Source: Adineta vaga (taxonomy: Eukaryota; Animalia; Rotifera). Taken from it: DNA of 64,000 nucleotides. The translations under genes and the position numbers were made by a program. Shown here piece by piece: positions 8,150 to 41,711 of the stretch (the stretch's first letter is position 1; each line of letters opens with the position of its first letter). The stretch is from assembly GCA_021613535.1 (NCBI GenBank), contig CP075494.1, positions 14,074,001 to 14,138,000 of the forward strand. Direction: 5' to 3'. The notes below the pieces were generated by a model. It was not told where the DNA came from, did not search any database, and saw nothing but the letters and a program-made list of their open reading frames with translations.

Positions 8150-10228
8150 TTAGAATGTAAGAATGGGAATTTGATTAGATTCAAGAATATCTTTCACAAT
8201 AAACTGACATGGTAATGTTAAATATGTTAAACATGTTTGTAATGGTAGAGTTTGAATAGGTTGATTTAAACGAGAACTTGAACCACGCATCCAACTCATT
8301 GCTTGACTAAGTGTACGACCAAGGAAACCACTTGAATCATCAGCTAATTCTAAAATATAAATTCAAATGAGTAACTAATCTTTAGTAATAGAAGAATATT
8401 ACCTTGTTGAATATCCGTAGATTCAACTTCAGGTGTTGTGACATTCGATGCAATTTGTTGTTGTCGAGAAGTCGGTGGAATCCATCGACCGATAGATATA
8501 CTATCAAGTGCACGACGTTTGTTCCACTATGGATAAAACAAAGAACAAAACATTCGTAACATTGAAATTTAACGAAATGTGATTAGGAATTAACATACAC
8601 TTTCTTCATCGAAACTACTTGACATGGGTGTTGTTGGAATAGATTCTGGAGTTGTAATACCGGAGTGAATTGTTCGACATCGGCTGACTGCCATTTCTGC
8701 ATGACCTTTACCCTTTAAAAAAAAAGTAATAAATCATAAATATTTTCTTTGAAAATACAACTAATAGTAATTCATTAATATTCAGATCTTTTATAACAAT
8801 AATTTTTTTCTAAAAACATTCATACCCTCTTTGTATTTCTATCTCACTATTCTTAATTAGAAATATGTAGATTATTTCCTTGATAAACTCTACAATAGTC
8901 ATGACATTTATCATTTAATTGCTATATTGACACTTTAACATAACTATTAATTCGTTTTCTCTCATCAAACTAAGTGCATGAACTATTATTTTTACCGATA
9001 GAACAAAAAAACAAAAAAGTTCTTTCTAAATTATTACTAACTCGATAATAACATAGCTAATCGAGAGTTTTGTTTTAATGAGATCAATACCCTAGATGAT
9101 TCATCGTCGAGATCTCCTGGAAATGACTAAACTTACATTTGGTCCACGCATTCGTACAAATTCCATACGTCGTTTTGTATACATTCCTAAGGACATACGT
9201 TGAGCAACTCGAGTACTTGTTGTTGCCTGTGAAAACAAAAGATCGATAGTCTCTTGAAATATTCATATATATTTATTTCTACTCGAGTTTCATAAACTTT
9301 TTTCAAAGCTTCATATTTGATTGAACCAAGAAAAAGTACTCGTGGTTCATTTAAACGTAGATTTTTTGCTACTAATTCAACACATACCATCTGACCTTCA
9401 TTCACAACCATCTCACAAAATGTCTAAAAGAATCGATAAAAATATTTGAGTTGTTTTTTTTTCTTCTTTCATTACATCTTCGAAATTATCAACGGTAAAA
9501 TAAATATTTGGATAAGTTATTTTCTCTTCCGTTCCTTTGCTTTCCATATCGCGACGTGATGGACTCGCATAAACTTTCTAAAGAAGAATTTGTTTTTCAG
9601 ATTTTCTATGAGACAAAAAAATAACGTCATTTTCTTTCTTACAGTTGATAAACGTTTGAGAATTTGAAGATGTTTATTACTTGTTTTTGTACATACAGCT
9701 GTCGTGACGGTATATTCAAATTGATGAAGAACAAGATTAAGATTTGTTGTTTCTTCCCAATCATATTCTGGTGTTCCCTTATATCAAAAATTTATCATTG
9801 AAGAATTTGTTGAAAACAAAACGTTTGCTCACTAATCTTGGTTGACGTTTTATATCATGATGACGATAAACTTCTACCAAATGCTAAAGAATCAATGACA
9901 AATTGATTTATAGAAGAATATATTCAAGAATAATGTTTACTAATGGATGATGAAAATCATTGTCTACTTGACGTGTGACATAGAAAACTAAATCATCATC
10001 ATTTGTTGTTTGTGAGAGACGAGTTATCGGTGAAAGAAAATATGATTGAAATAATCTTGGCCATTGAGAGTTTAATTGTTGAATATGTACATAATCATCA
10101 TCTAAACGAAAACAGAAAACAAACTAAGAGAGATTTTCTTATTTTTCAAATGAAATACCTTCATCACTTTTATTCTTTCGTCGTTCATTGACCATAGCCA
10201 AAAGAAGATTTTCAATTGACAATGTCAT
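8150..10228 (-). CDS. KIAA0930: KIAA0930 (DUF2045) homolog
   Basis: Spliced translation gives DDLVFYV, YDWEETTNLNLVLHQFEYTVT, KVYASPSRR, ITYPNIYFTVDNFE, VCVELVA, LFLGSIKYEALKKVY, MEFVRMRGPNGKGHAEMAVS and C-terminal LTYLTLPCQFIVKDILE..PILTF*. Confidence 0.88.
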
Positions 10229-15054: not shown

Positions 15055-20454
<5,400 letters not shown>

Positions 20455-21904
20455 GTTTGGTATTTTTTTACTTTCAATCAATGTTTAATAAACAACACCT
20501 TGATGAAAATAGTCATATCAACAAAGAGACATACATGCACACAGCGTCGCATGTTTCACCGACGAATTGATATTTTATTTGTGTGTAAATATCTACAGAG
20601 AAATAAACAATCGATGATTAAACATATTATATATGTAAGAAGAAGAAGAAAGCTTCTCGTAATTCTTTCAAATATGAACAACGAAACAAAAAAGAATGCT
20701 TATGATGATGCCCGTAGAGAAATTAACAGACACGAGAGAGAGAGCGAGCGAATGTGAACGTGAGAAGAATCGACACATGCAAAGCTATTAGCGTAATCAA
20801 GATTGTCATCGTTAGTCGGCATTCATTTTTTGCATATGTATAATTTCAATTGAAAGAAACGAAAAACTATCTTGTTATCATTTTCAAAATGAAAAGTGAC
20901 AATACGAATGATAATCATCTGTACGGTTGTTTTACACTAAATAAAACTATAATATAAAATGTGTTTTCCATCATTGATTTATCTATTCAACCAAACGAGT
21001 ATAATGATAATTCTTATCCCCCCCAAAAAAAGAATTCTTTTTTCTCTTTCGGTCATAGACATCGAGTGGATGAGTGAGTGAGGAAAAGAACGTTTGCTAT
21101 CGTAGCTGCTCAATCGTCACGATCTTTCAGTATATATGTATTTATGTATATGTGTGTGTGTATGGTTGTCTGACTATGTAGGCGGCAGAATGAGGAAATA
21201 GATTGTAAGGGGTGACCAAAGAGAAAGAGGGAAAAGAACGAAGAAGAGGTCATCAAGACGTCGCTTATTTATCGGACATGCGATTACGTCCGTCAATCCT
21301 TCTATGTAATCGATTGACCGACTTGTTTCTCTGAGAAAAAAACAATGAATGAATAAAAAGGAAACGTTAAACAACAAGAGCATCAATATCACTAAATGAG
21401 AACCAGATTTTTTCTATCTAGAAACAAAGACGAGAGACGACAATGAAGAAGAAAAGACAGAATCTTTACTTACGTCATTAACTGACATTTACTTGGCTTT
21501 TTTTTCTGCTCAAAAGGTTCGCCTAGGTCTAATTCTTTTTCTTTTTATCTTTTAAACTAAAATCAAATTTAGAAGATTTATCACACATAAGACATTTAAC
21601 TCGAAAGGAAATAAATCAAACGAAAAAAATCAGATATATTACCATATTGAACAAAAAGAAACCGTACATAAACGACAGAAAGGGTAAGACAAATGTATAT
21701 AAAGAGAAGAACAAGAAGAAGAAGAAAAAAAGAGAAAGAAAAAGAAGCACATCTCACTAGAGGAATGGAGAGTTATCGTTAACCAATAAAAAATCGAATT
21801 GAATATTGGGGGCGCTAGATAACATATGATACGAAATAAGGAAGAAAAAAAAGTAAATATAACTTGTTTTGCTTCGATACTATCACAAAAATTTGTTTTC
21901 AAAG

Positions 21905-23382
21905 ATGCCTAAACCATCACGTCGTGTTATAGGGAAACCGGGAGCCTTGACATTCAATGATGTTCATGGAAAAGGAATAATTCTTTCGAATAATAGTCGA
22001 CAAGCAACAAGAACATCAGGCTTTGGTGATGCAATTGTATTTAGTTCTCGAACTATACGTACATATGAAAAAGTGTTTTTGAGACATCGTCAAAAACAAG
22101 TCGACTGGATCGGTAGCCTTCGAGTTGGATTTTGTATGCATGATCCAAAAACACAATTTACACAAGATACATTACCAAGTTTAGCTTTTAAACATTTAAC
22201 AGGTATGTATATGTAAAGTAGAAATTGATTTATTAAGTATTTATTTGTTTATTTATTTAGATAAAGCTGGTTATTGGCTACGTGCTTGTTCAGATGAACT
22301 TCTTCGAACTTCGCCAATTATTTACGTATATTATTCTTTTGGTAAGAAGATAAATGATTCATAGTCATCCGAATATTTCATAATTATTCTATTTAGATGG
22401 TCAAATCTATGTTGGAGGTTACGGCCAAACAACGCCTGCTCAAGCGGTCTTAACTATCAATGAACATTGTGGTCCATATTATTTATTTTGTGAAGTTTAT
22501 GGTAAAACAGATCAAATAGAAATTGTCGATCAATCAACTTTACCAGATCAAAATTTACTTAATGAAGGTGTTTCCCTTTCAATTCATGGTAATGTTATTG
22601 ATTCAGTCAATACAAAATTAGCTGCAAATCCTAATCTTTCTCATCTTCAATATTTTAATTATTTATTTACATCAAATTCTTTACATAAATTAACATTTCT
22701 TCCTACAACTAAACATAATGTTATATTTACAAATAATCAACGAATTGCATGTGTGAATAATCTTCGTTTCAAATCGAGTTATGTTTTTCTTGATACATCA
22801 ATGAAAGCTGGTGACATTCTCATTTGTAAAGTAATGGATTGTGATGCTAACATATCATCTTTACTTCTTTTTGGTTTAACAACACAAAATCCATCAATGT
22901 TACAATCTCATACATTACCCGAAGAAAGTACAACACTTGTAGATAATTATTCATTATCACAATGGTTTATCGATACTGATATCAATGCAAATATATCATT
23001 ATATGATGAATTAGCATTTTGGTTTGAATCTGATGGTTATATTTATCTTTCGATTGACAATCGTCCGCCAATAAAACTTAAAACTCCAACTATACCATCA
23101 GATATGATTAATATGAGTTTCTATCCATTTTTCGATCTCTATGGACAAATAACGTCACTCTATTTATACAATTTTAGTTCATTAAATAGATTGAATTTTA
23201 GTAGACCATCGACTGCTCGAACATTATGTTTAATTTGTTGTGAAAATCTAGCCGATACACAATTGTTGCCGTGTCAATGTATATTATGTAGTCAATGTGC
23301 ATCTGTTATTAAACGTCCAAGTTTACTTTCAGATTGTCCATTTGATCGAAAACATATTACTCAAATTCAACCATTATTGTGA
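21905..23382 (+). CDS. Neuralized-like E3 ligase (two NHR domains + C-terminal RING variant)
   Basis: NHR1 LTFNDVHGKGIILS..ATRTSGFGDAIVFSSR..WIGSLRVGFCMHDP; NHR2 ..LLFGLTTQNP..FYPFFDLYGQITSL; RING CLICCE..LLPCQCILCSQCA..CPFDRKHI. Introns at ~22204-22260 and ~22342-22396. Confidence 0.85.
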
Positions 23383-29915: not shown

Positions 29916-30593
29916 TTTTTAAAGTAATAGTATAGCGAATTACATGGAGAAAGAATCGATCTGTAATCGAAATAATTTTCAAAATTCTACTCATTAACAA
30001 TAATCTCATCGTTATCATCAGCATTGATGCAGATACAAGAAAGAAAACCTTCAAGAAATTGAGCAGATTCTTCTTGTTTGTATGATGATGATGATAATGA
30101 TGAGACTCACGTGATACACATTTATTTTACATGCAAGAAAAATGTACTGAGAAACACGCGGAAAGTTCGATGCATATTTTTCAAAAACAAATAGATAATT
30201 TCGAAAGGAAAAAAGAAGGGAAAACCGACATCTTGAGTGATGGCATGGTAATGTTTGTAAACGAAAGGTCTCTTTTTTCTCCTTCTCTCCTCTCTTCCCT
30301 TTTCTAATCGCTCTTCTTTCTCTGTTAGCCTCGGACACATCAATGCATATAATTATTTCTTGTTTCGTTCGTAAAAGAAAAATAGAAGAGAAAAAGAGAG
30401 AGAGAGAGGGAGAAGGAGAGAAGGGAAAAGAGGATTGTTCTGTTCTTAGCAATCGGAGAATATGCCCTCTTCTTCCTCCTTCGTTTTTTCTTGGCTTGTT
30501 TGAGAACAGAACAGAGAAAGAAAAAACTCAATTAATCGAGGGCATCTATAGGTTTGAATAGTTTGCCGGACATGTTCGCCAAGGGTCAAGTAA

Positions 30594-30620
<27 letters not shown>
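30594..30620. repeat. (GA)n microsatellite upstream of HMGB gene
   Basis: Run agagagaga... directly visible. Confidence 0.8.
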
Positions 30621-30626
<6 letters not shown>

Positions 30627-31491
30627 GAGCAAATAAATGAATGACCATGATGATTTATCGCCTATTGATTTTGGGTCAACTATGAAATATTTCTTTTGGA
30701 ATCGACAATTGAACAAATATAATTCTCTTTAATCATCTCAAATATTTTAATGAAAAGAATAAATGTCATTAATAACTAGAAAAGGTTATGCGAAATGTAA
30801 ACAATAGAAAAATGCCAAAGAAAAAAAACATGTATTTTTTTTGTTGGTCCAACTGATAATGACAGCTACTTCACAAATCATTATCGAGTCTTTCATCGTA
30901 CGTATGTTCGCTCATTCAAAATCAATTAGTAAAAGACAATTTATATACGAACATCATACATTCAAGTGTTCGACACGAGCAATTATGCATTGACAAAAGA
31001 ATGTCAAGTGATTCGATGAATAGATAGATAAAAAAAGAGGAGAAATACAAGAAAAAAAGAACAAGATACTGATATCTAACACAAATTCTTTAACGATTGA
31101 AACAATAGAAAAACCGTAACTAGTTTTTTTTCTACTCGTCATTCAATATTTACCTGTACTCGACATATTCACTATCTCATAATGACGAACATAGAAGTTT
31201 TTTTCTTTTTTTTTTCAAAAAAAAAATTCAAACGTGATTTTGATTTCTTTTCGTTCGAAGCAATTTCATTGATCAACGAGTTCCACCAATCAGAGAAAGA
31301 TTATAATGCATTACCATATGATATCGATTTCGGTAAAATAATTTGTTTAGAACTTTTACAATACCAAATCGATTAACTTTTTCTGACAGTTCACTGCGTG
31401 TAAAAAAAACCCTATGAACAAGTCGAATTTTTATTTCTGAATTTCAAACATGATAAAGAAAAACTAATCTTTATAGATCTAAAATAGAAAC

Positions 31492-34400
31492 ATGAGTGAT
31501 ACAGCAGCAATTGAATTATTAAAACGAGCTGTACAACTCGATGGTGAACAAAAGTATCCTGATGCATTAACTTGTTATTCTGAAGGTATTCGCATGTTGT
31601 TAAATGTTGTCAAAGGTAAGAAGATATGAAGATCAAGTTTTTTTTACGAAGAGATTTTCAAATAGATATTCCATCGACTGAAGAACGAAAACGAACTGCA
31701 TATCGAGAGAAAATTACTGAATGTATTGATCGTGCTGAGAAGCTCAAAGATTTAATTGATCAACAGAAAGGTATAGTAACCATTACTTTCATTTTAAGAA
31801 TAAAATACAATGTTAGCTTTTGTTCTTCTGTACTTTGATATAAAAATTTCATGAAAGAAAAGAGAAAGAAATTCTGAGATAACATAAGAGTTTATCATAT
31901 CTATTGTCACATTGACGTTACTTGTACTTTCGTCATATATGATAATATTCTTTTAAAACAATTTATCTATTTGATTATGTTGAAATTCATCTATTTTACT
32001 TTGTACATATTATCAAATATTCTTTTTATCAATGGACAATATGTTCAAACTATGTCAACTCAAGAAACATGTGTTCCATCAACGATTACTCTTCGTTGTC
32101 CAAATAATTATGTCGTTGTTGTTCGAAGTGCATCACACGGTGTGGCACAAATCACTGATTCTTGTTCATATAAACCCGGAGATTGTATTGTTGATGCCAT
32201 GAATAGTGTAACATGTCTAACGGATTCTATACAATGTTCAATTTATGCTGTTAGAAAGAAAATTGCTCAATGTAATGATCTATATAGTAGTTATTTTCGT
32301 GTTGAGTATGATTGTGTACCAATCTCAATGGATGATACATCGAATGAATATAATATATGCCATAATAATACAGATATAACAACTAATCATGGAATTATAC
32401 ATAGTCCTGGTTATCCATCACAATTTCAATTAACACCATTTGAATGTTTTCGTGCGATACATATTCCTGAGAATAAACATGTACGTTTATGGTTATCTGA
32501 TCTTGCTATTAGTTCAACAAGTACAAATTGTGCAAGTGATTATGTTTATGTTGTCGATAATATTCAAACATATAAACATTGTGGTTCAAAACGATATGCT
32601 TATCCATATTTGTGTTCATCAACGATTCTTATTCAATATTTTGTTCAAACTAAGTTTACTAGCTATCGAGGAATGAGAATCTATTTTGAAATCAGCGATC
32701 GATCTGTACATGATAATTGTCCGAATGTTACTGTTACACCAGTTCCAAGTTCAACAACAACAATGTCAACTCTCGAACCGGAAACAACAACAAATATACC
32801 AATTTATGTTCTACTTGGTATTGCATCACCAACACGTAGTTTTCAGATATGTGCAGGTAAATTACCATTCTTTTCCAGTTTTTTTTCCAACAAATAAATT
32901 TATTTAGGTGAATTTTATACAATTCAATGTCCAAATGATTATACAATAGCAGTAACAACGAACATATTCGGTGTAACATCATCCGATCAATGTGAATCAC
33001 ATGATGCAAGTCAACATTGTGTTGTAACTACTGATCCAATATTTTTATGTCGACAAACTTGTGTTTATATGTATCCTGGAAATCAAATTCTTCCATCCTG
33101 TAACAATAAAACTGCTGCTTATCAATATGTTGAATATCAATGTATTCCGACGAAAACGACTCTCGTTTCTCCAGATATTCCATGTTCTCATGATGGATCT
33201 AAAACGGACATTCGAATTGATCGTAATGGTCGATTTCAAAGTTATAATTATCCAAAATTAGAAAAGATGAATTGTAAATATCGTTTGAAAACGAAACCAG
33301 GTTATATTATGCATATTTATGCATTAGATATTAGTCTGAATAATTATGTTCCAAATTGTCAATCTAATAAAATGACATTGATCGAAGATAATGATAATCA
33401 AAGTACAGATTTTTGCGAACAACGAACGAATAGTTTGATCTATTCTAGTTGTTCTAATGAATTGGATTTACATTATGTTATTAATGATGATTCCCAACCC
33501 TTTTCCTATGGATTAGAATTATATATTGAAAGTCAAGCACGTCCATTCGATTGGTCTTGTGGAGAAAGTTTATCGACATCAACACATTTAACAACAAATC
33601 GAATAACACCAACAACACCATCACAAGCTACATCAATAACGAGTCTTTCTATGATGACTGTACTTAATCCAGTTGAATATGATATCTGTTACAATGATAC
33701 ATTTGTTGGAACTTGTCCATATGGATTTACATTTATGCTTCTTGATGCATTTTATGGTGTTAAAAATCAAGTCTCGAATAAATGTGCTTTTATTCAAGAT
33801 GATTGTGTTCAAGAAGCAACGTCAACAATCACACAATGTCATACCGATTTACCAAATTGTATTCTATCGTATTTAAATAAACGTCGATTAGCTCATTGTT
33901 CAGATAAGTATGCAGATTATTTACATATTACCTATCAATGTGTACCAAGCTTTCCAATCAGTTCAACATCTAGTTTAATTATCTATGATATTTGTAATAC
34001 AACAAATCAAATAGAAAATATGAATGGAATATTGATAAGTCCAAATTTTCCCAATTATGAACGAACTAATATTGAATGTAAACGAGAAATTCGAGGAATA
34101 CTCGATAAAGCATTAAAAATTTGGATTAATGAAATGGCTATAGCTAGCAATAATCAACGTACTACAGGTATACTATGATTTTTGGGAAATTTTTGAAATG
34201 TTTTTTGAATTATCTATTTATTCCTTAGAACATTCGAATCAACCAGATCTAACGATTTTTAAAACAAGTAATCTCGAACGAAGTTATCCATCAATTCGTG
34301 AAACATGTATCGATGATTATTTAACTATCGATACTCCACATATTATCTATGTTTACTGTGGTCTACGAAAAGTGGCTCTTGAACCTATTTGTGCAACAAA

Positions 34401-37400
34401 TATTATTGTACAATATAAAACAAGTTCATCATCAAATCTTTCTTACAAAGGTTTTAAATTATATTTTGAATGGGTTGAAAAACCATTAGATATATTTTGT
34501 CATGGTAATCCTTCTACTTATGATCCATCCATATCAACTACAACATCTATGACTGAACTCTTACCAATTTGGGCACAAAATCTTGATGTATCCTATACTC
34601 TTAGTAAACAAGTTTGTCTTGGTACAATCGAATCATTAACATGTCCACGTGGAAATGATTATGTACTTTCTATACGAAATTCAAATTATGGTGTCACAGG
34701 AACAGGCTTATGTGAATTCCCATCATTTTCTCATTGTCGGCAAGAAGCTTCATTAGGTTTAACATGTGCACATACTTGTTCCGTTGAATATATCATTCCT
34801 AAACCACTTTCTCAATGTCAAAATCAAAATGCTGATTATCTCAAAATTGAATATGAATGTATACCAACACGTTTACTAGATCATGAAAATCCTATAGATA
34901 TATGTGCATCAATACCAACAGAGACTATTGCAATGAATAAAGGTATGATGATAAGTCCACATTATCCAACATTGAATTCTGCTCATAGTTGTTCGAAAAA
35001 AATTGAAACTTTACCAAGTAAATTATGGATGGTTTATCTCGTTGATTTATTTTTGGAAAGTGAAGATGAATTTAGTGATTGTACACATGCATCATTAACA
35101 ATCTATGATGGAAAAGATAAACTTATTATTTGTGGTTTACAACAACCTGGCTTAGTTCTATTCAGTTGTTCTAATATTGTTCAATTTGATTTTATGTCAA
35201 ATCAACAAGCACTTGGTTATCGAGGTTTTAAAGTTTATTTTAAAACGATTGATATACCAATTGGATGGTCATGTGTACCAAGTGGATTTAGTACATCGAC
35301 AAAACAAACAACAACTTCATCATTTCCATTAACAACTTTAATTCCACCAACTCTTCAAAGTAAGTTTTGAGTCAATTGTATCGAACAACAGACAAATTTA
35401 TCTTTTGTGTCTATTTAGTTGCTGTTTATGGTGGATCAACTATTCATGGTATTCGACAATATTGTCAATTTCCATTTATATATCAAGGTATTCAATATAC
35501 CAATTGTATTGCTGATAAACCACCACATGCAACACCAGATCAAACTATCTATGATCCATGGTGTTCTCTAACTAGTAATCATGATGTTGATAGACAATGG
35601 GGCTTTTGCGATATTGGTGTAACAGATTCAACATTTCATGATGTATGTCGAAATCAATTACAAAATCTAAAATGTCCATCGGGATATGTTATTGATATGA
35701 TAACAGCTGATTATGCAGCAAAAGCAAATGGAATAATAGATTCAAATTCATGTTTTTATAATGAAAATGATTGTTTTCAAAATGATGCATCAACTATACA
35801 GAATGTTTGTGCCGGTAAAACATCTTGTACAGCATATCATTATGCTAAAAGTTTAGTGTCATGTCAAAATCGACCATCTGCTTATTTACATCTTGATTAT
35901 ACTTGTGTTCCAAATGATGTTCAAAATATTACGACATATGATATTTGTAGTAATGAAATAAAACCATTTGGTGATATTCGTCGTGGTTTTTTAATTTCAC
36001 CTAATTTTCCCAATTCGAAGAATAATATAAGTTGTACATATGATTTACATACATTAAAACCACATCAAGATATTTATCTATATATTATTGATATGGATTT
36101 AAATAGTCCAAATATCGTCGGACAAAGTTGTACAAAAGATCGATTAATTATTAATGCAGATGATAGTATTACTGAATGGTGTGGACGATCTTATACAAAT
36201 CTTCTTTTACGAACATGTCATGCATCTATATCTTTACAATTAATTCGATCATCAGATGCAAAAGGACGTGGAATAAAATTTTATTTCGAATTTCGACAAC
36301 GATCTCCCAATGAAATTTGTGAAGAAGTTATTACACCTAGTCCACGACCAACATTATCACCTCCACTAACAACATTACCATCACGTCCAAACTATTTCCC
36401 AAATCCATCTCCTCGAATGATAAAAACACTTTGTTATCCCGATGTTTCAGCACTATTCGGAACAAATAATTTTCAATGTCCATCAGATTATATTCTTGTC
36501 ATTCATCGAGCATTCTACGGTAAAGGCACTCAATGTGTTTATACACCTGGTGATTGTACGAGTGAGGCAGACAATATCTATCGAATATGTTCAGGAAAAC
36601 AAGTATGTTCAGTATCATTTTTAAGTATATTCAATTTACCTGAATGTGATAAAGCTATTGCCAATTATCTTTCCGTTCAATATCAATGTTTACCAGCAGC
36701 ATCGATTGTTCCCAATATCAATAATATTTGTACAAATCAAATGAATGAATTAATTCCAATTAGTGGTCTACTTCAAAGTACATCGTATCCATCTTATATT
36801 CCAAGTCAATGCGTACATGTAACATTAAGTTCACCAGAAGGATCGAATCTTGTTATTTATATGTATTTAATTGATCTTGATATTGATTTACCTGATGTTC
36901 AAACTGGTAATTGTACATATGATTATCTTTTCTTATCATATCAATGTAATAATGAATTATATGAAATAAATATATGTGGTACACATCAAACCGAACTTTT
37001 ATTTGATACATGTTCACCAACAGATAAAATATTTATTTCTTATAATTTAACAAATTCGAATTCACAATCACAACGTGGATTTTCACTTCTCTATCATCTA
37101 TTACCAACATCAATTCGAACAACTCCATCTTTATCAACAGTAACATCAAAAGCAAGTACATCAATGACGACAACAACAACAACAGAAGTAATAATTGGAC
37201 CTGGTCCAATCAGTACAGTCATATCACAATCAACAGCATGTGTTCAACAGAATATACAATTACGTTGTAATCCAACTTATGGTCTTGTTCTACATACAAT
37301 CGATCTTGCCGTCAGTCGAACAGGTAGCTGTAATTATTCTTCAGATGATTGTTTCGAAGAACGCAGTTATTTACATGGCACATGTGGTGGTAAATCTTCT

Positions 37401-39886
37401 TGTTATATATTTGTTCCGTTACTTACATTATCAAAATGTAATAATTCCAAATCCAATTATTTCTATGCTGAATATCAATGTATTCCATTAAAACCCAAAT
37501 TAAATATTGATATATGTTCGTCAATGACGACATTGGAAAGAGTCGAAGGTGGTGCAATTGTTCAAACAAAAGGTTATATATCAGAGAATACAAAATGCCA
37601 AGTTCGATTACAGTCAGCGAAATCAGTAGAACATTCTGTTCATAAAGCATTTGCTGTTTATGTTGTTATGCTTGATTTACCATTTCGAGCATTTCGTGAA
37701 CAAGGTACACAATGTTATGATTCTGATCCATATATTGAAATTGTTGATGCACAAATAGGCACAACACGTCTTTGTGGAAGTATGCATACACGTCAATTAT
37801 TTGAAACATGTGCAGATACAATTGAAATTCGTTATAACAATTTTAATATTGGAGCTAGTGAACGATATAAAGGTTTCCAATTATATTTTGAATCAATCGA
37901 GAAGAGAGAATGTTCCGATTTTGTTACAACAAGTCCACCAAAACAACGAGAACCATTGATTATCAATGAAGATATTGTTTGTACATCAGCAGAACGAATC
38001 AGTTTTTCATGTACAACAAATCATGGTCTTGTCTTTTTACAATCATATGAATTTATTACCAGTAACCCACAAGCTTGTGATATTAATCAACAATCTTGTC
38101 ATTATCTTGCTGAACAACCTCAAGCACTTTGTTCCGGTCAACAAACTTGCACTTATATTCATACAATTCCCATCGGTCCACATTTGAATACATGTCAAGG
38201 TATAAAAGGTGATTTACTTCAATTTTTCTATCAATGTATACCAATGAGATCAACACCGATCTATCCAGTAGCAAAATTTTGTGATGATACAATTGTTACA
38301 TTCAATCAAGGATTTATTGAAACGCCAAGATATCCAAATACATATGAGAATGATCGAAAGCAATGTACTTTACGTATTGTATTACCGAACACTCCGGAAG
38401 GAAAACAACTTTCAATCTTTCTCTATATTATCAATTTATCTATTCGTGATACATCAATAATGAATTCAACATCATCAACTATTGAATGTTATGATTCAAT
38501 TACATATCGTGATGGACAAACAAGTGAAACATTATGTGGAAATATTGATCAACCTGTATTTCAATATCAAACAAATAAAAATGATTTAGAATTAATATTA
38601 AACATAACTGAATCTCTTTCTTCTTCGGATACTTCTTCATCCAAATGGCATGGTGCACGTTTGTTTTTCTTTATTGGAAATCAATCACTTCCATCACCAC
38701 CAAGAAATCCTCTAACAACAACCTCAACAATAATAACAAAACCAACCGTAGAAGATATTTCGACAAAACCTACTAATCAACATTCCAAAAACGGACCTAT
38801 TATTGGTGGTAGTATTGCGGGTGTTATAGTTTTAATATTATTAGCAACAATTGCTTCGATATATTATCGACGTCGTTCATCTCCGCAATCGAGTGAAACT
38901 CCATTAGTTGAATATCGAAAAAAACCTGATTCCATTCAGGAGAATAACATTGATGAATCATATGATAAACATTGTAGTAGTATACCCACATCATCGTTAA
39001 GAGGCTCAGCTATTCCATCCTTTACTAGTCCATTTCATTTAAGATATAATTCTGAAAATGATAATGATACTTAAAAATCGAATAAATAAATATTTTCCCT
39101 TTTTTATATTTGACATATCAAAATAAATAATAATTAATCGAAATTCCTTCTTCATTTTAGCAAAAACTTATCATGAACAACTTCAAATAAAAGATGGTTC
39201 AATAGGCAACAGTTATGAAAAGATTTTCAGTCGATTTCTCAATGAACATGTGACACAAATTACCGTTCAAGATCCATATATACGAGCCTATCATCAAGTT
39301 TGTCTTCGATTTTTGTCATCGAAAATTTATATTTATCAAACAAACTCTTCTTTAGATCAGCAATTTTCTACGTTTTTGCGAAGCTGCTATCAAATCACCA
39401 GCAAATATTAAACGAATCGATTTGATAACGAGTACGGAAACGGTAGAATCAATTCAAGACTTTCTTTTATAATCTTCTTTTCTGATTATTTATTAGAATG
39501 ATCAAGCAAAGAAAACTCAAATTGAACAATTAAATGAATTTAAAGAACATCTGATGAAACGGCATTCAATTGATTTAACAATCAATTATATAACAGGATT
39601 ACATGATCGAGAAATAAAGTAAGTGAGTACCTAGGATCGCATTCTTAATTTCTATTAATTTCAAGATTGAATAATGGTTGGATAATTAAAATCGGTCGTG
39701 GACTGGATTTTTACAAACCACCAGAAAGTGACTAATCGAAACGTTTTTTTTTCTCAAAAATATGCATTATTTTCTTATTTGATTTAAGGCAAATTCTCCA
39801 TAGGATACTACGATCTTGATCTACGTCCATGTCATCAAACTACAATTGATATATTTCATAGTGAAAGAGTGCAATCATCTTCTTAA
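31492..39886 (+). CDS. MITD1: MIT domain-containing protein 1 (MIT + PLD-like MIT_C), with 7390-nt second intron
   Basis: Exon 1 31492-31615 ([28 protein letters not shown]) and exon 2 31666-31770 ([17 protein letters not shown]) splice in frame to exon 3 at 39161 ([34 protein letters not shown]). Later exons give [30 protein letters not shown] and [16 protein letters not shown]. Confidence 0.93.
31977..39074 (+). CDS. Large type I membrane protein (~2308 aa): signal peptide, 8x[SUEL/Gal-lectin-like + CUB + Thr-rich linker], one FN2, TM, short tail; nested in MITD1 intron 2
   Basis: Exons 31977-32856, 32908-34167, 34229-35359 and 35419-39074 total 6927 nt and are in frame. Each unit has C..L.CP..Y...A.YG...YL.VEY.C.P followed by G...SP.YP...C...CG...GF..YFE. 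FN2 [28 protein letters not shown] at ~35463-35610. [25 protein letters not shown] followed by RRR. Confidence 0.9.
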
Positions 39887-40015
39887 AAAAACATTTCTGA
39901 ATATCTTGTAAATTTCTTCTTCTTTTTTTATTCATTGTCAAAGTGTAGATCTAACATGTTATCTTTTTCAATAAAAACATTCAATATATTTTCTGATATT
40001 TTCAATTGAATTTAG

Positions 40016-40873
40016 ATGGAAAATATTCGAATAGGTTTTATTGGTGGTGGTAGAATCGTTCAAGCATTACTTGAAGGATTCTATGAAATAGATTATCTTC
40101 GAAATATGAAGATTTGGATAAGTTGTCCATCTGCTGAGAATGAAAACTCAACTTTAAAACGTTTTAATACTCATATACAAATGACGACATCGAATACAAT
40201 GTTATGTAATAATTGTGATATTGTTTTATTTGCTGTTAAAGCGAAATTAATCAAATCAGTCTGTGCAGAACTTGAAAAAGCAGTAGATAATACTCGTTTA
40301 TCACAAATATTATTTGTTTCAATCATTCCGGGTTTAACTATTTCAACAATAACACAATGGCTTCATACACAAGAGAATATTATGAGAATTATGTATAATG
40401 TTAATGTTGCTAAATGTAATGGTTCCTATGCAATATCATCATCATCAAAAATGAATGAGAATAATCTCAATCAGATCTATTTAAAATCAATTTTTGATAA
40501 AGTTGCTTATTTTGCTGGTAATGTTAGTGAATCGGAATTGGATATCATGTGTGCATTGATTGGTAGTGGTCCAGCATTTTTCTGTACAGCAGTTGAAGGT
40601 TTAGCTGATGGTGCCGTTAAAGCTGGTCTATCACGTCAATTAGCAAATACTTTAGCTGCTCGAACAATGCTTGGTTGTGCTGATATTCTTGTGACATCAT
40701 CAAAACATCCAGCTGAATTGAAAAATGATATATCCACGCCAGGTGGTACGACAATCTACGGTTTACATGAACTTGAAAATAGATGTGTACGAGGTGCATA
40801 TATGGATGCTTTGATGTCAGCATTTAATCGTGCGCAAACGATGGCTGATCAATTAGCCAAAGAATTAAAATGA
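40016..40873 (+). CDS. PYCR: Pyrroline-5-carboxylate reductase, intronless
   Basis: Rossmann IGFIGGGRI, IVLFAVK, ALIGSGPAFF, EGLADGAVKAGL, HPAELKNDISTPGGTTIYGLHELE. Confidence 0.95.
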   Translation: MENIRIGFIGGGRIVQALLEGFYEIDYLRNMKIWISCPSAENENSTLKRFNTHIQMTTSNTMLCNNCDIVLFAVKAKLIKSVCAELEKAVDNTRLSQILFVSIIPGLTISTITQWLHTQENIMRIMYNVNVAKCNGSYAISSSSKMNENNLNQIYLKSIFDKVAYFAGNVSESELDIMCALIGSGPAFFCTAVEGLADGAVKAGLSRQLANTLAARTMLGCADILVTSSKHPAELKNDISTPGGTTIYGLHELENRCVRGAYMDALMSAFNRAQTMADQLAKELK

Positions 40874-40916
40874 ATAAAGATCTAAGTTCTTTTTAGTTTA
40901 TTTTCTGTTTTAGATC

Positions 40917-41711
40917 ATGTTATCTATACTTCGAAATCTCACTCTTTGTCAATCGACAAATTCGATTCGATTAACATCTTTAATTCGTTTCGCTGGTTCA
41001 TTACAAGAAAAACATAAAGAACATTCAATAAAAGCGAAAGATTTCTTTATCGATCCAAATCTACAAAAATCCTTTGAAAAATTAAAGAAAGGTGATTTTA
41101 TTCCTGAACCAATTAATACAGGTTCATTTAGTTATATTCGAAATCAGTCACCAATCGAATCAAAATTTGATACTACATTATCTAAACGAGAAGTTCTTCG
41201 TCAAGATTTTCTGGGCAAACTTGTCTATATTGGCAAATTAGATAAACCATTTCGTGCAGCGAAATCTCTTTCCTTAGCATCAAGTCTTGGTGGTGCTATT
41301 TGTTATCCAATAATGTTACCGAAAATCATCGAAGAAGCATCAATATTTATGGTAATCGGTTACACAATTATTTCTGCTACATTTGTTTTATTAACACCAT
41401 CTTTAATACAAATGATTTGTAAAAGATATTTAACATCAATCTATTATCATGAACAAACGGGTGAATTCACTGGATTTTATAAGAATTTCTTTATGATGGA
41501 AAGACAAATTAAATTTCGTGCTGATGATGTTCAAGTCCCACCAATTACTGGCATGTTTACATCGATGCTTATTAAAAATCAACCATTCTTTGTTAATCAT
41601 GATGATTTTCTTGATAAACCAATATTAATGAAGATGTTAGGATATGATAAAGAATTTGATTTTAGTAAATATACAAAAGATCTTACAAATGATGAAAAAA
41701 AAGAAACATAG
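40917..41711 (+). CDS. TMEM70: TMEM70-like mitochondrial ATP synthase assembly factor
   Basis: Presequence-like N-terminus; GKLVYIGKL..AAKSLSLASS, two TM segments, LTPSLI..KRYL, KFRADDVQVP...MFTS, KMLGYDKEFDF. Confidence 0.88.
   Translation: MLSILRNLTLCQSTNSIRLTSLIRFAGSLQEKHKEHSIKAKDFFIDPNLQKSFEKLKKGDFIPEPINTGSFSYIRNQSPIESKFDTTLSKREVLRQDFLGKLVYIGKLDKPFRAAKSLSLASSLGGAICYPIMLPKIIEEASIFMVIGYTIISATFVLLTPSLIQMICKRYLTSIYYHEQTGEFTGFYKNFFMMERQIKFRADDVQVPPITGMFTSMLIKNQPFFVNHDDFLDKPILMKMLGYDKEFDFSKYTKDLTNDEKKET

What the first reader, a model, noticed from the sequence alone, without database searches (positions are those of the whole stretch)
31771..39160. Complete 7.1-kb receptor gene nested on the SAME strand inside MITD1 intron 2
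Seen: MITD1 exon 2 (AAA G|gtatag, 31770) joins in frame to exon 3 (ttttag|CA AAA ACT TAT, 39161), giving QQKAKTYHEQ, colinear with known MITD1. The 7390-nt intron is over 100x the usual ~55-nt introns here. It is almost entirely filled by a 4-exon, ~2308-aa membrane-protein gene with its own ATG (31977), stop (39074) and AATAAA (39081). Established: nested genes are usually antisense. Inference: MITD1 pre-mRNA must ignore six internal splice sites and an internal polyA signal, so the two genes could be mutually exclusive outputs of one locus. The intron falls at the MIT / PLD-like domain boundary. No AG occurs for ~85 nt before the nested ATG, which suggests an internal promoter rather than a trans-splice site.
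Basis: partly seen in the sequence, partly recalled or inferred. Interest (0 to 1): 0.85.

Follow-up and report, generated by a model that had tools for sequence, protein, structure and literature searches.

The report
Receptor gene nested inside MITD1 intron
In this bdelloid rotifer a complete gene for a 2,308-residue membrane protein lies on the same strand inside one 7.4-kb intron of the small MITD1 gene; RNA data show both genes are correctly spliced, and the arrangement is old but is an ordinary kind of gene nesting.

Summary

**The junction is real.** RNA contigs from three studies join MITD1 exon 2 (ends 31770) to exon 3 (starts 39161). The 7,390-nt intron is therefore removed. It is about 130 times the local median intron of 56 nt.

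**The guest gene is real.** 96% of the intron is a four-exon gene (CDS 31977-39074, 2,308 aa). It encodes a signal-like N-terminus, CUB, FN2 and SUEL-lectin domains, and one membrane span. All three of its introns are spliced in RNA.

**The host.** MITD1 mRNA carries the bdelloid spliced leader, added at 31476/31477. MITD1 is single-copy in this genome.

**The nesting is old.**
- It is also found in Adineta steineri, Didymodactylos carnosus and two environmental bdelloids.
- The homoeologous block on contig 2 kept the receptor but lost MITD1, PYCR and TMEM70.
- Three other relatives have a 51-69-nt intron at the same position and no guest there.

**Mechanism.** Most likely the guest has its own promoter in the first ~140 nt of the intron, while host transcription reads through it. 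This is inferred, not shown. "Mutually exclusive outputs" was not tested.

**Context.** Same-strand nesting is common in animals, and this scan has already noted other cases elsewhere in this genome. This is a well-documented new member of a known kind. Public annotations of two relatives wrongly fuse the two genes.

The parts
31475..31476 (+). AG acceptor where the spliced leader is added to MITD1 mRNA, 15 nt before the ATG
   Evidence: The loose letters ACTTACCAAG lie before 31475 in runs X9 and X18. ACTTACCAAGAG followed by GT occurs 53 times in the own genome, in SL RNA genes.
31492..31615 (+). MITD1 exon 1 (coding part), first half of the MIT domain
   Evidence: Pfam MIT positions 3-39, E 1.5e-9. 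The exon is single-copy in the own genome. It is joined to exon 2 in three RNA runs.
31666..31770 (+). MITD1 exon 2, end of the MIT domain; its donor is at 31770|31771
   Evidence: Pfam MIT positions 42-66. An RNA joint 31615^31666 is seen, and the contig continues beyond 31770 with the first letters of exon 3.
31771..39160 (+). MITD1 intron 2, 7,390 nt, phase 1, GT..AG; the host intron
   Evidence: Searches give the model. RNA from three studies shows the intron removed.
31771..31910 (+). Presumed promoter region of the guest gene, with TATAAA at 31839 (inferred)
   Evidence: The guest contig of X9 starts at 31911 without leader letters. TATAAA lies at 31839, and A. steineri has a TATAAAA at about the same place. 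No 5'-end mapping was done.
31977..32856 (+). Guest exon 1 (coding part): signal-like N-terminus and a CUB domain
   Evidence: Pfam CUB, E 4.5e-9. The N-terminus reads [20 protein letters not shown]. The exon lies in RNA contigs.
32857..32907 (+). Guest intron 1, 51 nt, phase 1
   Evidence: RNA joint in X7 and X9; absent from the DNA run X6.
32908..34167 (+). Guest exon 2, with a CUB domain
34168..34228 (+). Guest intron 2, 61 nt, phase 1
   Evidence: RNA joint in X7 and X9.
34229..35359 (+). Guest exon 3, with a CUB domain
35360..35418 (+). Guest intron 3, 59 nt, phase 1
   Evidence: RNA joint in X7 and X9.
35419..39074 (+). Guest exon 4 (coding part, stop at 39072-39074): FN2, SUEL-lectin and CUB modules, membrane span, short tail
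   Evidence: Pfam fn2, SUEL_Lectin and CUB. The membrane span [23 protein letters not shown] is followed by RRRSS.
39081..39127 (+). Guest poly(A) signal candidates (AATAAA at 39081, 39085, 39122), 33-79 nt before the host acceptor
   Evidence: One search gives the hexamers. An ATAAA(A) box about 40 nt before the acceptor is shared with A. steineri and L012. The cleavage site was not mapped.
39161..39297 (+). MITD1 exon 3, linker and start of MIT_C; its acceptor is at 39160|39161
   Evidence: Pfam MIT_C positions 1-31. Its first 28 letters follow exon 2 in RNA.
39356..39886 (+). MITD1 exons 4-7 (39356-39442, 39497-39618, 39666-39727, 39789-39886; stop at 39884-39886)
   Evidence: Pfam MIT_C positions 32-142, colinear, and the translation.

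Best explanation
This is a genuine host/guest gene pair on one strand.

**Host.** MITD1 is a small ESCRT-III-associated protein with a MIT domain and a phospholipase-D-like MIT_C domain. Its gene is transcribed from upstream of 31476. The mRNA receives the bdelloid spliced leader at 31476/31477. RNA polymerase must then cross the whole 7.4-kb intron 2. The intron is removed by joining 31770 to 39161, so the guest sequence on host transcripts is discarded with it.

**Guest.** It is a four-exon gene for a 2,308-aa type I membrane protein built of CUB, SUEL-lectin and FN2 modules. It is most likely transcribed from its own promoter in the first ~140 nt of the intron. It splices its own three introns. 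It ends at a poly(A) signal only about 35-80 nt before the host's 3' splice site.

**History.** The nesting arose before the split between Didymodactylos and the other bdelloids. After the old genome duplication, the homoeolog on contig 2 kept the guest and lost the host. Some other lineages have a short host intron without a guest.

**Shown:**
- both mature RNAs exist, with the stated junctions;
- the leader is present on MITD1;
- the arrangement is conserved.

**Inferred:**
- the guest's own promoter;
- the guest's poly(A) site;
- read-through by the host polymerase as a single molecule.
For: **Junction.** The 31770^39161 junction is seen in RNA contigs of three studies: X7, X9 and X18. The host intron 1 joint is in all three. 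The three guest introns are spliced in X7 and X9, and none of these joints is in the DNA run X6. The 28 loose letters occur only at 39161 in the window.

**Leader.** Leader letters lie before 31475. SL RNA genes with that sequence are present in the own genome.

**Host is single-copy and intact.** MIT_C and exon 1 occur only here. The exons are intact and colinear with Pfam MIT and MIT_C.

**Independent regulation.** X18 holds the host without the guest.

**Own promoter for the guest.**
- The X9 guest contig starts at 31911 with no leader letters.
- The X7 contig is unbroken across the last AG at 31889-31890.
- A TATAAA lies at 31839.

**Not an assembly error.** A DNA contig of another sample runs colinearly from about 30592 to 34981.

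**Same order in relatives.** The order MIT exons, receptor, MIT_C exons, PYCR, TMEM70 is found in A. steineri, in L036 and, from the receptor onward, in L012. D. carnosus shows receptor, MIT_C, PYCR and TMEM70, and the MIT domain appears only in its annotated upstream product, not in the DNA fetched.

**Homoeolog.** The block on contig 2 has the receptor and no MITD1. Contigs 2 and 5 fit the homoeologous pair of Adineta vaga (PMC8494291).
Against: - Only assembled contigs, not raw reads, were available. They cannot show 5' ends, 3' ends, strand or abundance.
- In X7 the guest contig is continuous with the last 30 nt of MITD1 exon 2. Transcripts unspliced at 31770 therefore run into the guest, so some guest RNA could start at the host promoter.
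- By its length, the 5,542-nt guest contig would end 28 nt inside MITD1 exon 3. That suggests read-through past the guest poly(A) signal.
- The TATA-like box is weak evidence in 30%-GC DNA.
Confidence: 0.75

Rival explanations
1. The guest has no promoter. Its mRNA is an alternative product of the MITD1 primary transcript. Either intron 2 is removed, giving MITD1, or the transcript is cut at the guest poly(A) site, giving the receptor. The locus would then be a true either/or switch.
For: The X7 contig links the last 30 nt of exon 2, unspliced, to the guest. The guest poly(A) signal lies within 80 nt of the host acceptor, and this spacing is kept in A. steineri and L012.
Against: - X18 has spliced MITD1 but no guest contig, and the X9 guest contig starts at 31911 unlinked to exon 2.
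- Such an mRNA would carry the MITD1 start codon and 76 codons ahead of the guest ATG.
- No usable AG for leader addition lies within 86 nt of that ATG.
Confidence: 0.15
2. Host and guest exons are spliced together into fusion proteins (MIT-receptor or receptor-MIT_C), as the public gene models of A. steineri and D. carnosus propose.
For: Host intron 2 and all three guest introns are phase 1, so every cross-join would stay in frame. The public models are P0162 (1,996 aa with MIT, CUB, fn2, SUEL and MIT_C) and a 2,318-aa D. carnosus model with MIT plus receptor domains.
Against: - No host-guest joint appears among the joints of three RNA runs over 31380-37379, though contigs drop rare forms.
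- A cytosolic MIT domain ahead of an extracellular protein that has lost its signal peptide makes little sense.
- The guest has its own stop and a conserved tail.
- Phase identity has a one-in-three chance.
Confidence: 0.04
3. The two MITD1 halves are separate transcription units, joined by trans-splicing between two pre-mRNAs.
For: The organism has an active trans-splicing machinery. Short contigs cannot tell cis from trans.
Against: - The halves are colinear on one strand with a standard GT..AG pair.
- Relatives with a 51-69-nt intron at the same position plainly splice in cis.
- Exon 3 has no start of its own.
Confidence: 0.03
4. Assembly chimera: the receptor was wrongly placed between the MITD1 halves.
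For: None found.
Against: - An independent DNA contig crosses the left boundary.
- DNA runs of three studies hold 0.99-1.00 of the sampled words of 31400-39900, though these may be the assembly's own source samples.
- Four other assemblies of related species show the same order.
Confidence: 0.01

Closest known systems
Host/nested gene pairs of animals: a protein-coding gene lying wholly inside an intron of another, in the same orientation
   Same: - The guest lies entirely in one intron, which is the host's only long intron and near its 5' end.
- Both genes give mature mRNAs.
- In mouse and human, nested genes also sit preferentially in long, 5'-proximal introns, and the two orientations are about equally common (PMC11694760).
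   Different: - The genome is compact, with a median local intron of 56 nt, so the host intron is about 130 times the norm and 96% filled by the guest.
- The host mRNA is spliced-leader trans-spliced.
- The host heads a conserved tight cluster MITD1 > PYCR > TMEM70.
- The guest's poly(A) signal lies within 80 nt of the host's 3' splice site.
Spliced-leader operons of nematodes and other animals
   Same: - The genes are on the same strand.
- An upstream gene's poly(A) signal lies tens of nucleotides before the next acceptor.
- The organism trans-splices.
   Different: - The acceptor after the guest is used for cis-splicing to MITD1 exon 2, not, as far as seen, for leader addition.
- The guest shows no leader.
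Other same-strand nested genes noted by this scan in the same genome (chitinase in an LRRK intron, BEN gene in a TPR-like intron)
   Same: They are same-strand guests in enlarged introns, reported as conserved among bdelloids (unchecked notes).
   Different: - The guest here is far larger: 7.1 kb with four exons.
- RNA evidence was obtained here.
- The matching sequence boxes proposed for the BEN case are not found here.

Membership tests
Intronic same-strand host/nested gene pair | The guest lies wholly inside one host intron, on the host strand | tested here: met
   The guest CDS 31977-39074 lies inside intron 31771-39160, both on +.
Intronic same-strand host/nested gene pair | Host exons on both sides of the guest are joined in mature RNA | tested here: met
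   The exon 2 contig continues with the first 28 letters of exon 3 in three RNA runs of three studies.
Intronic same-strand host/nested gene pair | The guest yields its own processed mRNA | tested here: met
   All three guest introns are spliced in X7 and X9 and not in DNA.
Intronic same-strand host/nested gene pair | The guest has its own promoter and poly(A) site | tested here: inconclusive
   A contig starts at 31911 without leader, and X18 holds the host alone. However, the X7 contig is continuous with exon 2, and contigs cannot show ends.
MITD1 family (host) | N-terminal MIT domain plus C-terminal MIT_C (phospholipase-D-like) domain in one protein of about 245 aa | tested here: met
   Pfam MIT positions 3-66 over exons 1-2 and MIT_C positions 1-142 over exons 3-7. 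The model gives 244 aa. The C-terminal half of a Rotaria ortholog is 47-56% identical to MITD1 proteins of other animal phyla, and the window's own MIT_C half falls with it in the bdelloid clade.
MITD1 family (host) | Binding of ESCRT-III subunits and a role in abscission | not testable with these tools
   This needs experiments.
Spliced-leader operon, with the guest as a downstream cistron | Leader added at an acceptor shortly before the guest start codon | tested here: not met
   No leader letters on guest contigs; no AG in the 86 nt before the ATG; the X7 contig is unbroken across AG 31889-31890. Rare forms cannot be excluded from contigs.
Single fused MIT-receptor-MIT_C gene (public models of relatives) | Splice joints between host and guest exons | tested here: not met
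   Only within-gene joints appear over 31380-37379 in three RNA runs.

The most novel reading that the evidence does not exclude
The guest's poly(A) site and the host's 3' splice site lie tens of nucleotides apart, and this spacing is kept in Adineta and a further bdelloid. They may work like an operon's intercistronic junction. Transcripts started at the guest promoter would read through and feed the downstream MITD1-3'/PYCR/TMEM70 cluster, with the 39161 acceptor taking the spliced leader on those molecules. On host-promoter transcripts, the same site would compete between cleavage and cis-splicing. The nested gene would then be a working part of an operon and a switch on MITD1 output.
Probability: 0.12. 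Interest if true: 0.65.

Novelty: new member of a known kind. Interest (0 to 1): 0.4.

Why it matters
- It is an RNA-verified case showing that a genome with ~55-nt introns can keep and correctly splice a 7.4-kb intron holding a whole same-strand gene. The arrangement has lasted across the bdelloid radiation.
- Three outcomes of one nest are on view, which makes it a clean natural series for studying how nested pairs resolve: both genes kept; host lost and guest kept (the homoeolog); host with a short intron and no guest.
- On the practical side, public protein records of A. steineri and D. carnosus fuse or split these genes wrongly. Examples are a 1,996-aa 'MIT domain-containing protein' and a MIT_C-only MITD1. 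Gene finders for bdelloids need to allow for such nests.
- It also offers a tractable locus for asking how polyadenylation is suppressed on a host transcript in a trans-splicing animal.

Tried and rejected
1. **Assembly chimera.** Rejected on the evidence.
2. **A second MITD1 that would make this copy dispensable.** None exists. Pfam MIT_C and exon 1 hit only this locus in the own genome.
3. **Relics of MITD1, PYCR or TMEM70 beside the receptor copy on contig 2.** tblastn with the exon peptides (word size 2, E 0.01) and with all window ORF segments found none in 52 kb.
The best duplex between 31771-31976 and 39075-39160 is -20.5 kcal/mol. Dinucleotide shuffles give -16.6 +/- 3.0, and 10% of shuffles do as well, so this is not significant.
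5. **Known RNA families and tandem repeats over 30500-40500.** No Rfam family reaches its gathering score, and the only tandem repeat is a short one inside guest exon 1.
6. **The sigma-70/terminator scan.** It is irrelevant for a eukaryote and gave chance-level hits.
7. **The contig carrying P0003.** It could not be read because no DNA is held. Its gene table shows no long ORF before MIT_C, so it may be a further guest-free relative, but this is unverified.
8. **The Rotaria sp. Silwood2 contig.** It starts at MITD1 exon 3, so its state is unknown.
9. **Searches with the joined proteins.** Left out. The spliced MITD1 and receptor proteins have no reference, so all searches were made exon by exon, by reference. 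Exons were joined only inside local scripts, for translation and trees.
Full report
**Organism and setting.** The window is contig 5, 14,074,001-14,138,000, of a 100.8-Mb genome in six contigs. Its GC content is about 30%. The closest named relative at this locus is Adineta steineri (85% identity over MITD1 plus PYCR). Six chromosome-scale pieces, with 2 and 5 homoeologous, fit the published Adineta vaga assembly (PMC8494291). I take it as A. vaga or a very near strain; this is an inference.

**The observation.**
- The seven-exon MITD1 model translates to 244 aa with a stop at 39884-39886.
- Taken one by one, exons 1-2 match Pfam MIT positions 3-66. Exons 3-7 match MIT_C positions 1-142 in order. 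Intron 2 therefore falls in the linker between the two domains.
- Intron 2 is 31771-39160, 7,390 nt, GT..AG, phase 1. The other eight introns of the two genes measure 47-61 nt, median 56, so the ratio is about 130.
- The guest CDS (31977-32856, 32908-34167, 34229-35359, 35419-39074) gives 2,308 aa with one terminal stop. It has a hydrophobic signal-like N-terminus and a single membrane span followed by RRRSS.
- The guest carries CUB domains in every exon, an FN2 domain and SUEL-lectin domains. It fills 96% of the intron.
- The last AG before the guest ATG is at 31889-31890.
- AATAAA lies at 39081, 39085 and 39122. The hexamer also occurs 12 more times on the + strand inside the intron, so by itself it means little here.

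**RNA evidence.**
- Public runs of the same organism were found. Four were laid on 31380-37379.
- X7, X9 and X18 come from three different studies and behave as RNA, with introns removed. X6 behaves as DNA, colinear with no joints.
- In all three RNA runs one contig joins MITD1 exon 1 to exon 2 (31615^31666). It continues beyond 31770 with CAAAAACTTATCATGAACAACTTCAAAT.
- These 28 letters occur once in the window, at 39161-39188, which is the start of exon 3. The unspliced genome reads GTATAGTAACC... at that point.
- In X7 and X9 the three guest introns are also removed at exactly the predicted sites. No joint between host and guest exons is listed.

**Spliced leader.**
- In X9 and X18 the MITD1 contig begins with ten letters, ACTTACCAAG, that are not in the genome before 31475.
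- ACTTACCAAGAG followed by GT occurs 53 times in the own genome, against 0-2 for the reversed control. The copies lie mostly in divergent pairs.
- One copy read in full looks like an SL RNA gene...ACTTATTACAACTTACCAAGAG|GTAAAT.
- Bdelloids are known to add a 23-nt leader to many mRNAs (Pouchkina-Stantcheva and Tunnacliffe 2005, as cited in PMC1925144).
- MITD1 mRNA is therefore leader-trans-spliced at the AG 31475-31476, 15 nt before its ATG.

**Ends of the guest transcript (weaker evidence).** Contigs cannot show true ends.
- In X9 the guest contig begins at 31911, 66 nt before the ATG. It has no leader letters and no link to exon 2.
- In X7 the guest contig begins at 31741, which is 30 nt inside exon 2, the expected k-mer overlap. 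It runs unspliced through 31771 into the guest. Some RNA in that sample is therefore unspliced at the host donor.
- That same contig is unbroken across the only candidate acceptor AG (31889-31890). This argues against frequent leader addition there.
- X18 has the spliced host contig but no guest contig. The host can therefore be expressed without detectable guest RNA.
- The 5,542-nt guest contig of X7 and X9 has 1,809 letters beyond 37379. If colinear, it ends at 39188, again 28 nt inside exon 3.
- I infer that some RNA runs uncut from the guest 3' UTR into exon 3. It could be host pre-mRNA or guest read-through. This was not seen directly.

**Assembly.**
- A 4,390-nt DNA contig of a sample not flagged as the assembly's source runs colinearly from about 30592 to 34981. 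It crosses from MITD1 exons 1-2 into the guest.
- DNA runs from three studies hold 0.99-1.00 of the sampled words of 31400-39900, though these may be the assembly's own source samples.
- Four independent assemblies of relatives show the same gene order (next section).
- A chimera is excluded for practical purposes.

**Copy number and the homoeolog.**
- MIT_C and MITD1 exon 1 occur only at this locus. This split gene is therefore the organism's only MITD1.
- The receptor has a full-length paralog at contig 2, 3,299,507-3,306,600, on the minus strand. It is 52-62% identical exon by exon.
- That paralog lies in an inverted colinear block. Window 15-21 kb, 28.7-29.8 kb and 44-55 kb have their counterparts on either side of it, in order.
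- The block holds no trace of MITD1, PYCR or TMEM70.
- After the old duplication, this copy kept the guest and lost the host and its two downstream neighbours.

**Relatives with the nest.** All searches were made exon by exon, by reference.

| Genome or contig | MIT exons before the receptor | Receptor | Spacing, receptor stop to MITD1 exon 3 acceptor | Host intron 2 | Followed by |
|---|---|---|---|---|---|
| A. steineri (L016) | exons 1-2 present | four exons | ~87 nt | 5,840 nt | PYCR, TMEM70 |
| Logan genomic contig (L036) | exons 1-2 present | complete | ~100 nt | 7,354 nt | PYCR, TMEM70 |
| JGI metagenome contig (L012) | contig too short | last 763 aa, 60% identical | 85 nt | unknown | PYCR, TMEM70 |
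| Didymodactylos carnosus (L026, L027) | see below | complete | ~1.2 kb | see below | PYCR, TMEM70 |

In D. carnosus the annotated upstream product carries MIT plus the receptor domains. Its MIT exons lie beyond the fetched DNA, so the intron is inferred to exceed 10 kb. About 1.2 kb, including a long inverted repeat, separates the receptor stop from exon 3.

**Public models are wrong in both named species.**
- A. steineri has one fused 1,996-aa protein with MIT, CUB, fn2, SUEL and MIT_C (P0162).
- D. carnosus has a MIT-plus-receptor fusion and a separate 187-aa MIT_C-only protein.

**Relatives without the nest.**
- ORF fragments that read from exon 2 through a short in-frame intron into exon 3 led to three contigs.
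- These are L014 (ENA metagenome, intron 63 nt, followed by PYCR and a third ORF where TMEM70 lies in the other loci), L028/L029 (Logan, 51 nt) and L037 (JGI, 69 nt).
- The intron position and phase are the same as in the window.

**Trees.**
- On the MIT_C half, with seven non-bdelloid animals, the bdelloid sequences form one group (95/95). D. carnosus branches first (90/82). The short-intron forms fall among the nested ones.
- Adding PYCR does not resolve the crown further.
- PYCR identity to the window is 84% for A. steineri, 80% for Rotaria sp. Silwood2, 74% for L014 and 51% for D. carnosus.
- The receptor tree has two well-supported groups. One holds the window, A. steineri and L012; its fully mapped member P0151 (contig L036) was mapped as nested. 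The other holds the contig 2 copy, A. ricciae and the Rotaria copies. None of the mapped members of the second group has MITD1 exons beside it. The D. carnosus copies lie outside both groups, on a midpoint root.
- The simplest reading is that the nest predates the D. carnosus split and the contig 2/contig 5 duplication. The duplicate lost the host. The short-intron loci either lost the guest or are the other homoeolog that did.
- The direction of change rests on D. carnosus being the outgroup and is not proven.

**How it most likely works.**
- *Shown:* both mature mRNAs exist, and MITD1's is made by removing the entire guest-bearing intron.
- *It follows* that host transcription passes the guest's three donors, three acceptors and its poly(A) signal without fatal use of them. 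The exception would be joining in trans, which I rate at 3%.
- *Inferred:* the guest is an independent unit with a promoter between 31771 and about 31910. TATAAA lies at 31839, and A. steineri has a TATAAAA at about the same place. Its transcripts end just before the host acceptor.
- An ATAAA(A) box about 40 nt before the acceptor is shared by the window, A. steineri and L012. The stop-to-acceptor distance is 85-101 nt in four genomes.
- Cleavage of the guest and recognition of the host's 3' splice site must therefore happen on nearly the same stretch of RNA. That makes competition plausible, but it is untested.
- Host intron 2 and all guest introns are phase 1, so cross-joins would stay in frame. 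This probably misled the gene finders. No such joint is seen, and the chance of matching phase is one in three.
- No significant complementarity links the two intron ends.

**Comparison with what is known.**
- Host/nested pairs are common in animals. In mouse and human the orientations are 'broadly similar' in frequency, and nested genes favour long, 5'-proximal introns (PMC11694760).
- Nested genes can provoke premature polyadenylation or intron retention in hosts (PMC11694760; title of PMC3192792).
- No paper in the library pairs 'Adineta' with 'nested gene'.
- This scan has already noted other same-strand nests elsewhere in this genome: a chitinase in an LRRK intron, a BEN gene in a TPR-like intron, and housekeeping genes in an ABCA intron (unchecked notes).
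- The present case is thus a new, unusually well-supported member of a known kind.
- Its particular points are the size contrast, the great age, the three different evolutionary outcomes, the leader-trans-spliced host heading a conserved MITD1 > PYCR > TMEM70 cluster, and the guest poly(A) signal abutting the host acceptor.

**Limits.**
- Only contigs, not raw reads, were available.
- One read-laying run of 6,000 letters was allowed, so the acceptor side, the guest's 3' end and MITD1 junctions 3-6 rest on sequence and conservation.
- The joined MITD1 and receptor proteins were not sent to any search tool. Exons were joined only in local scripts.

**Verdict.** The guest's own promoter is likely (about 0.75 for the whole picture). 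'Mutually exclusive outputs' stays open. Interest is 0.4.

Noticed in passing
L016:9979-12142 (A. steineri) against window 35419-39074: The nested receptor of A. steineri has a last exon of 721 codons against 1,217 here. It keeps the membrane span and a similar tail, so roughly 500 residues (about two lectin-CUB modules) differ between the two Adineta species.
   Followed up: partly
L026:9015-10211 (D. carnosus): About 1.2 kb separates the receptor stop from the MITD1 exon 3 acceptor, against 85-101 nt in the other species. It holds a long inverted repeat (about 9290-9420 against 9860-9990) that looks like a foldback or MITE-type insertion. The first exon of the public MIT_C-only model (10001-10056) starts at its edge.
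   Followed up: partly
P0162 (A. steineri), gene models in L026/L027 (D. carnosus), P0184: Public annotations fuse MITD1 with the nested receptor (1,996-aa and 2,318-aa models) or leave a MIT_C-only MITD1 of 187 aa. UniRef names such as 'MIT domain-containing protein' and 'Cubilin' rest on these models.
   Followed up: yes
window 39884-41711 and L012, L014, L015, L016, L026, L036: The tight same-strand order MITD1 > PYCR (P5CR) > TMEM70 is kept in every related locus long enough to show it, including D. carnosus. In the short-intron contig L014 the third ORF sits in the TMEM70 position but has no Pfam hit on record. This fits an old operon-like cluster.
   Followed up: partly
own genome, e.g. 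contig 5 at 9.88-9.93 Mb and 10.91-10.93 Mb; L009:1480-1600: Spliced-leader RNA genes (ACTTACCAAGAG|GT) occur at least 53 times, mostly as divergent pairs about 167 nt apart. There are large clusters on contig 5.
   Followed up: partly
L014 (GC 48%) and L037 (GC 43%): Two environmental contigs have bdelloid-type MITD1 (and, in L014, PYCR at 74-78% identity to Adineta and Rotaria). Their GC content is far higher than the ~27-32% of the named bdelloid loci. They are unsampled lineages or unusual genome regions.
   Followed up: no
L015:465-1598 (Rotaria sp. Silwood2): The intron between MIT_C exons 5 and 6 is about 1.1 kb there, against about 50 nt in all other loci. D. carnosus has no introns between exons 5, 6 and 7.
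   Followed up: no
window 31771-39160: Host intron 2 and all three guest introns are phase 1, so any cross-splice between host and guest would remain in frame. None was seen in RNA contigs.
   Followed up: partly
L017 (Rotaria magnacalcarata) 18845-22186, minus strand: A PPR protein with a DYW deaminase domain is annotated two genes downstream of the un-nested receptor paralog.
   Followed up: no
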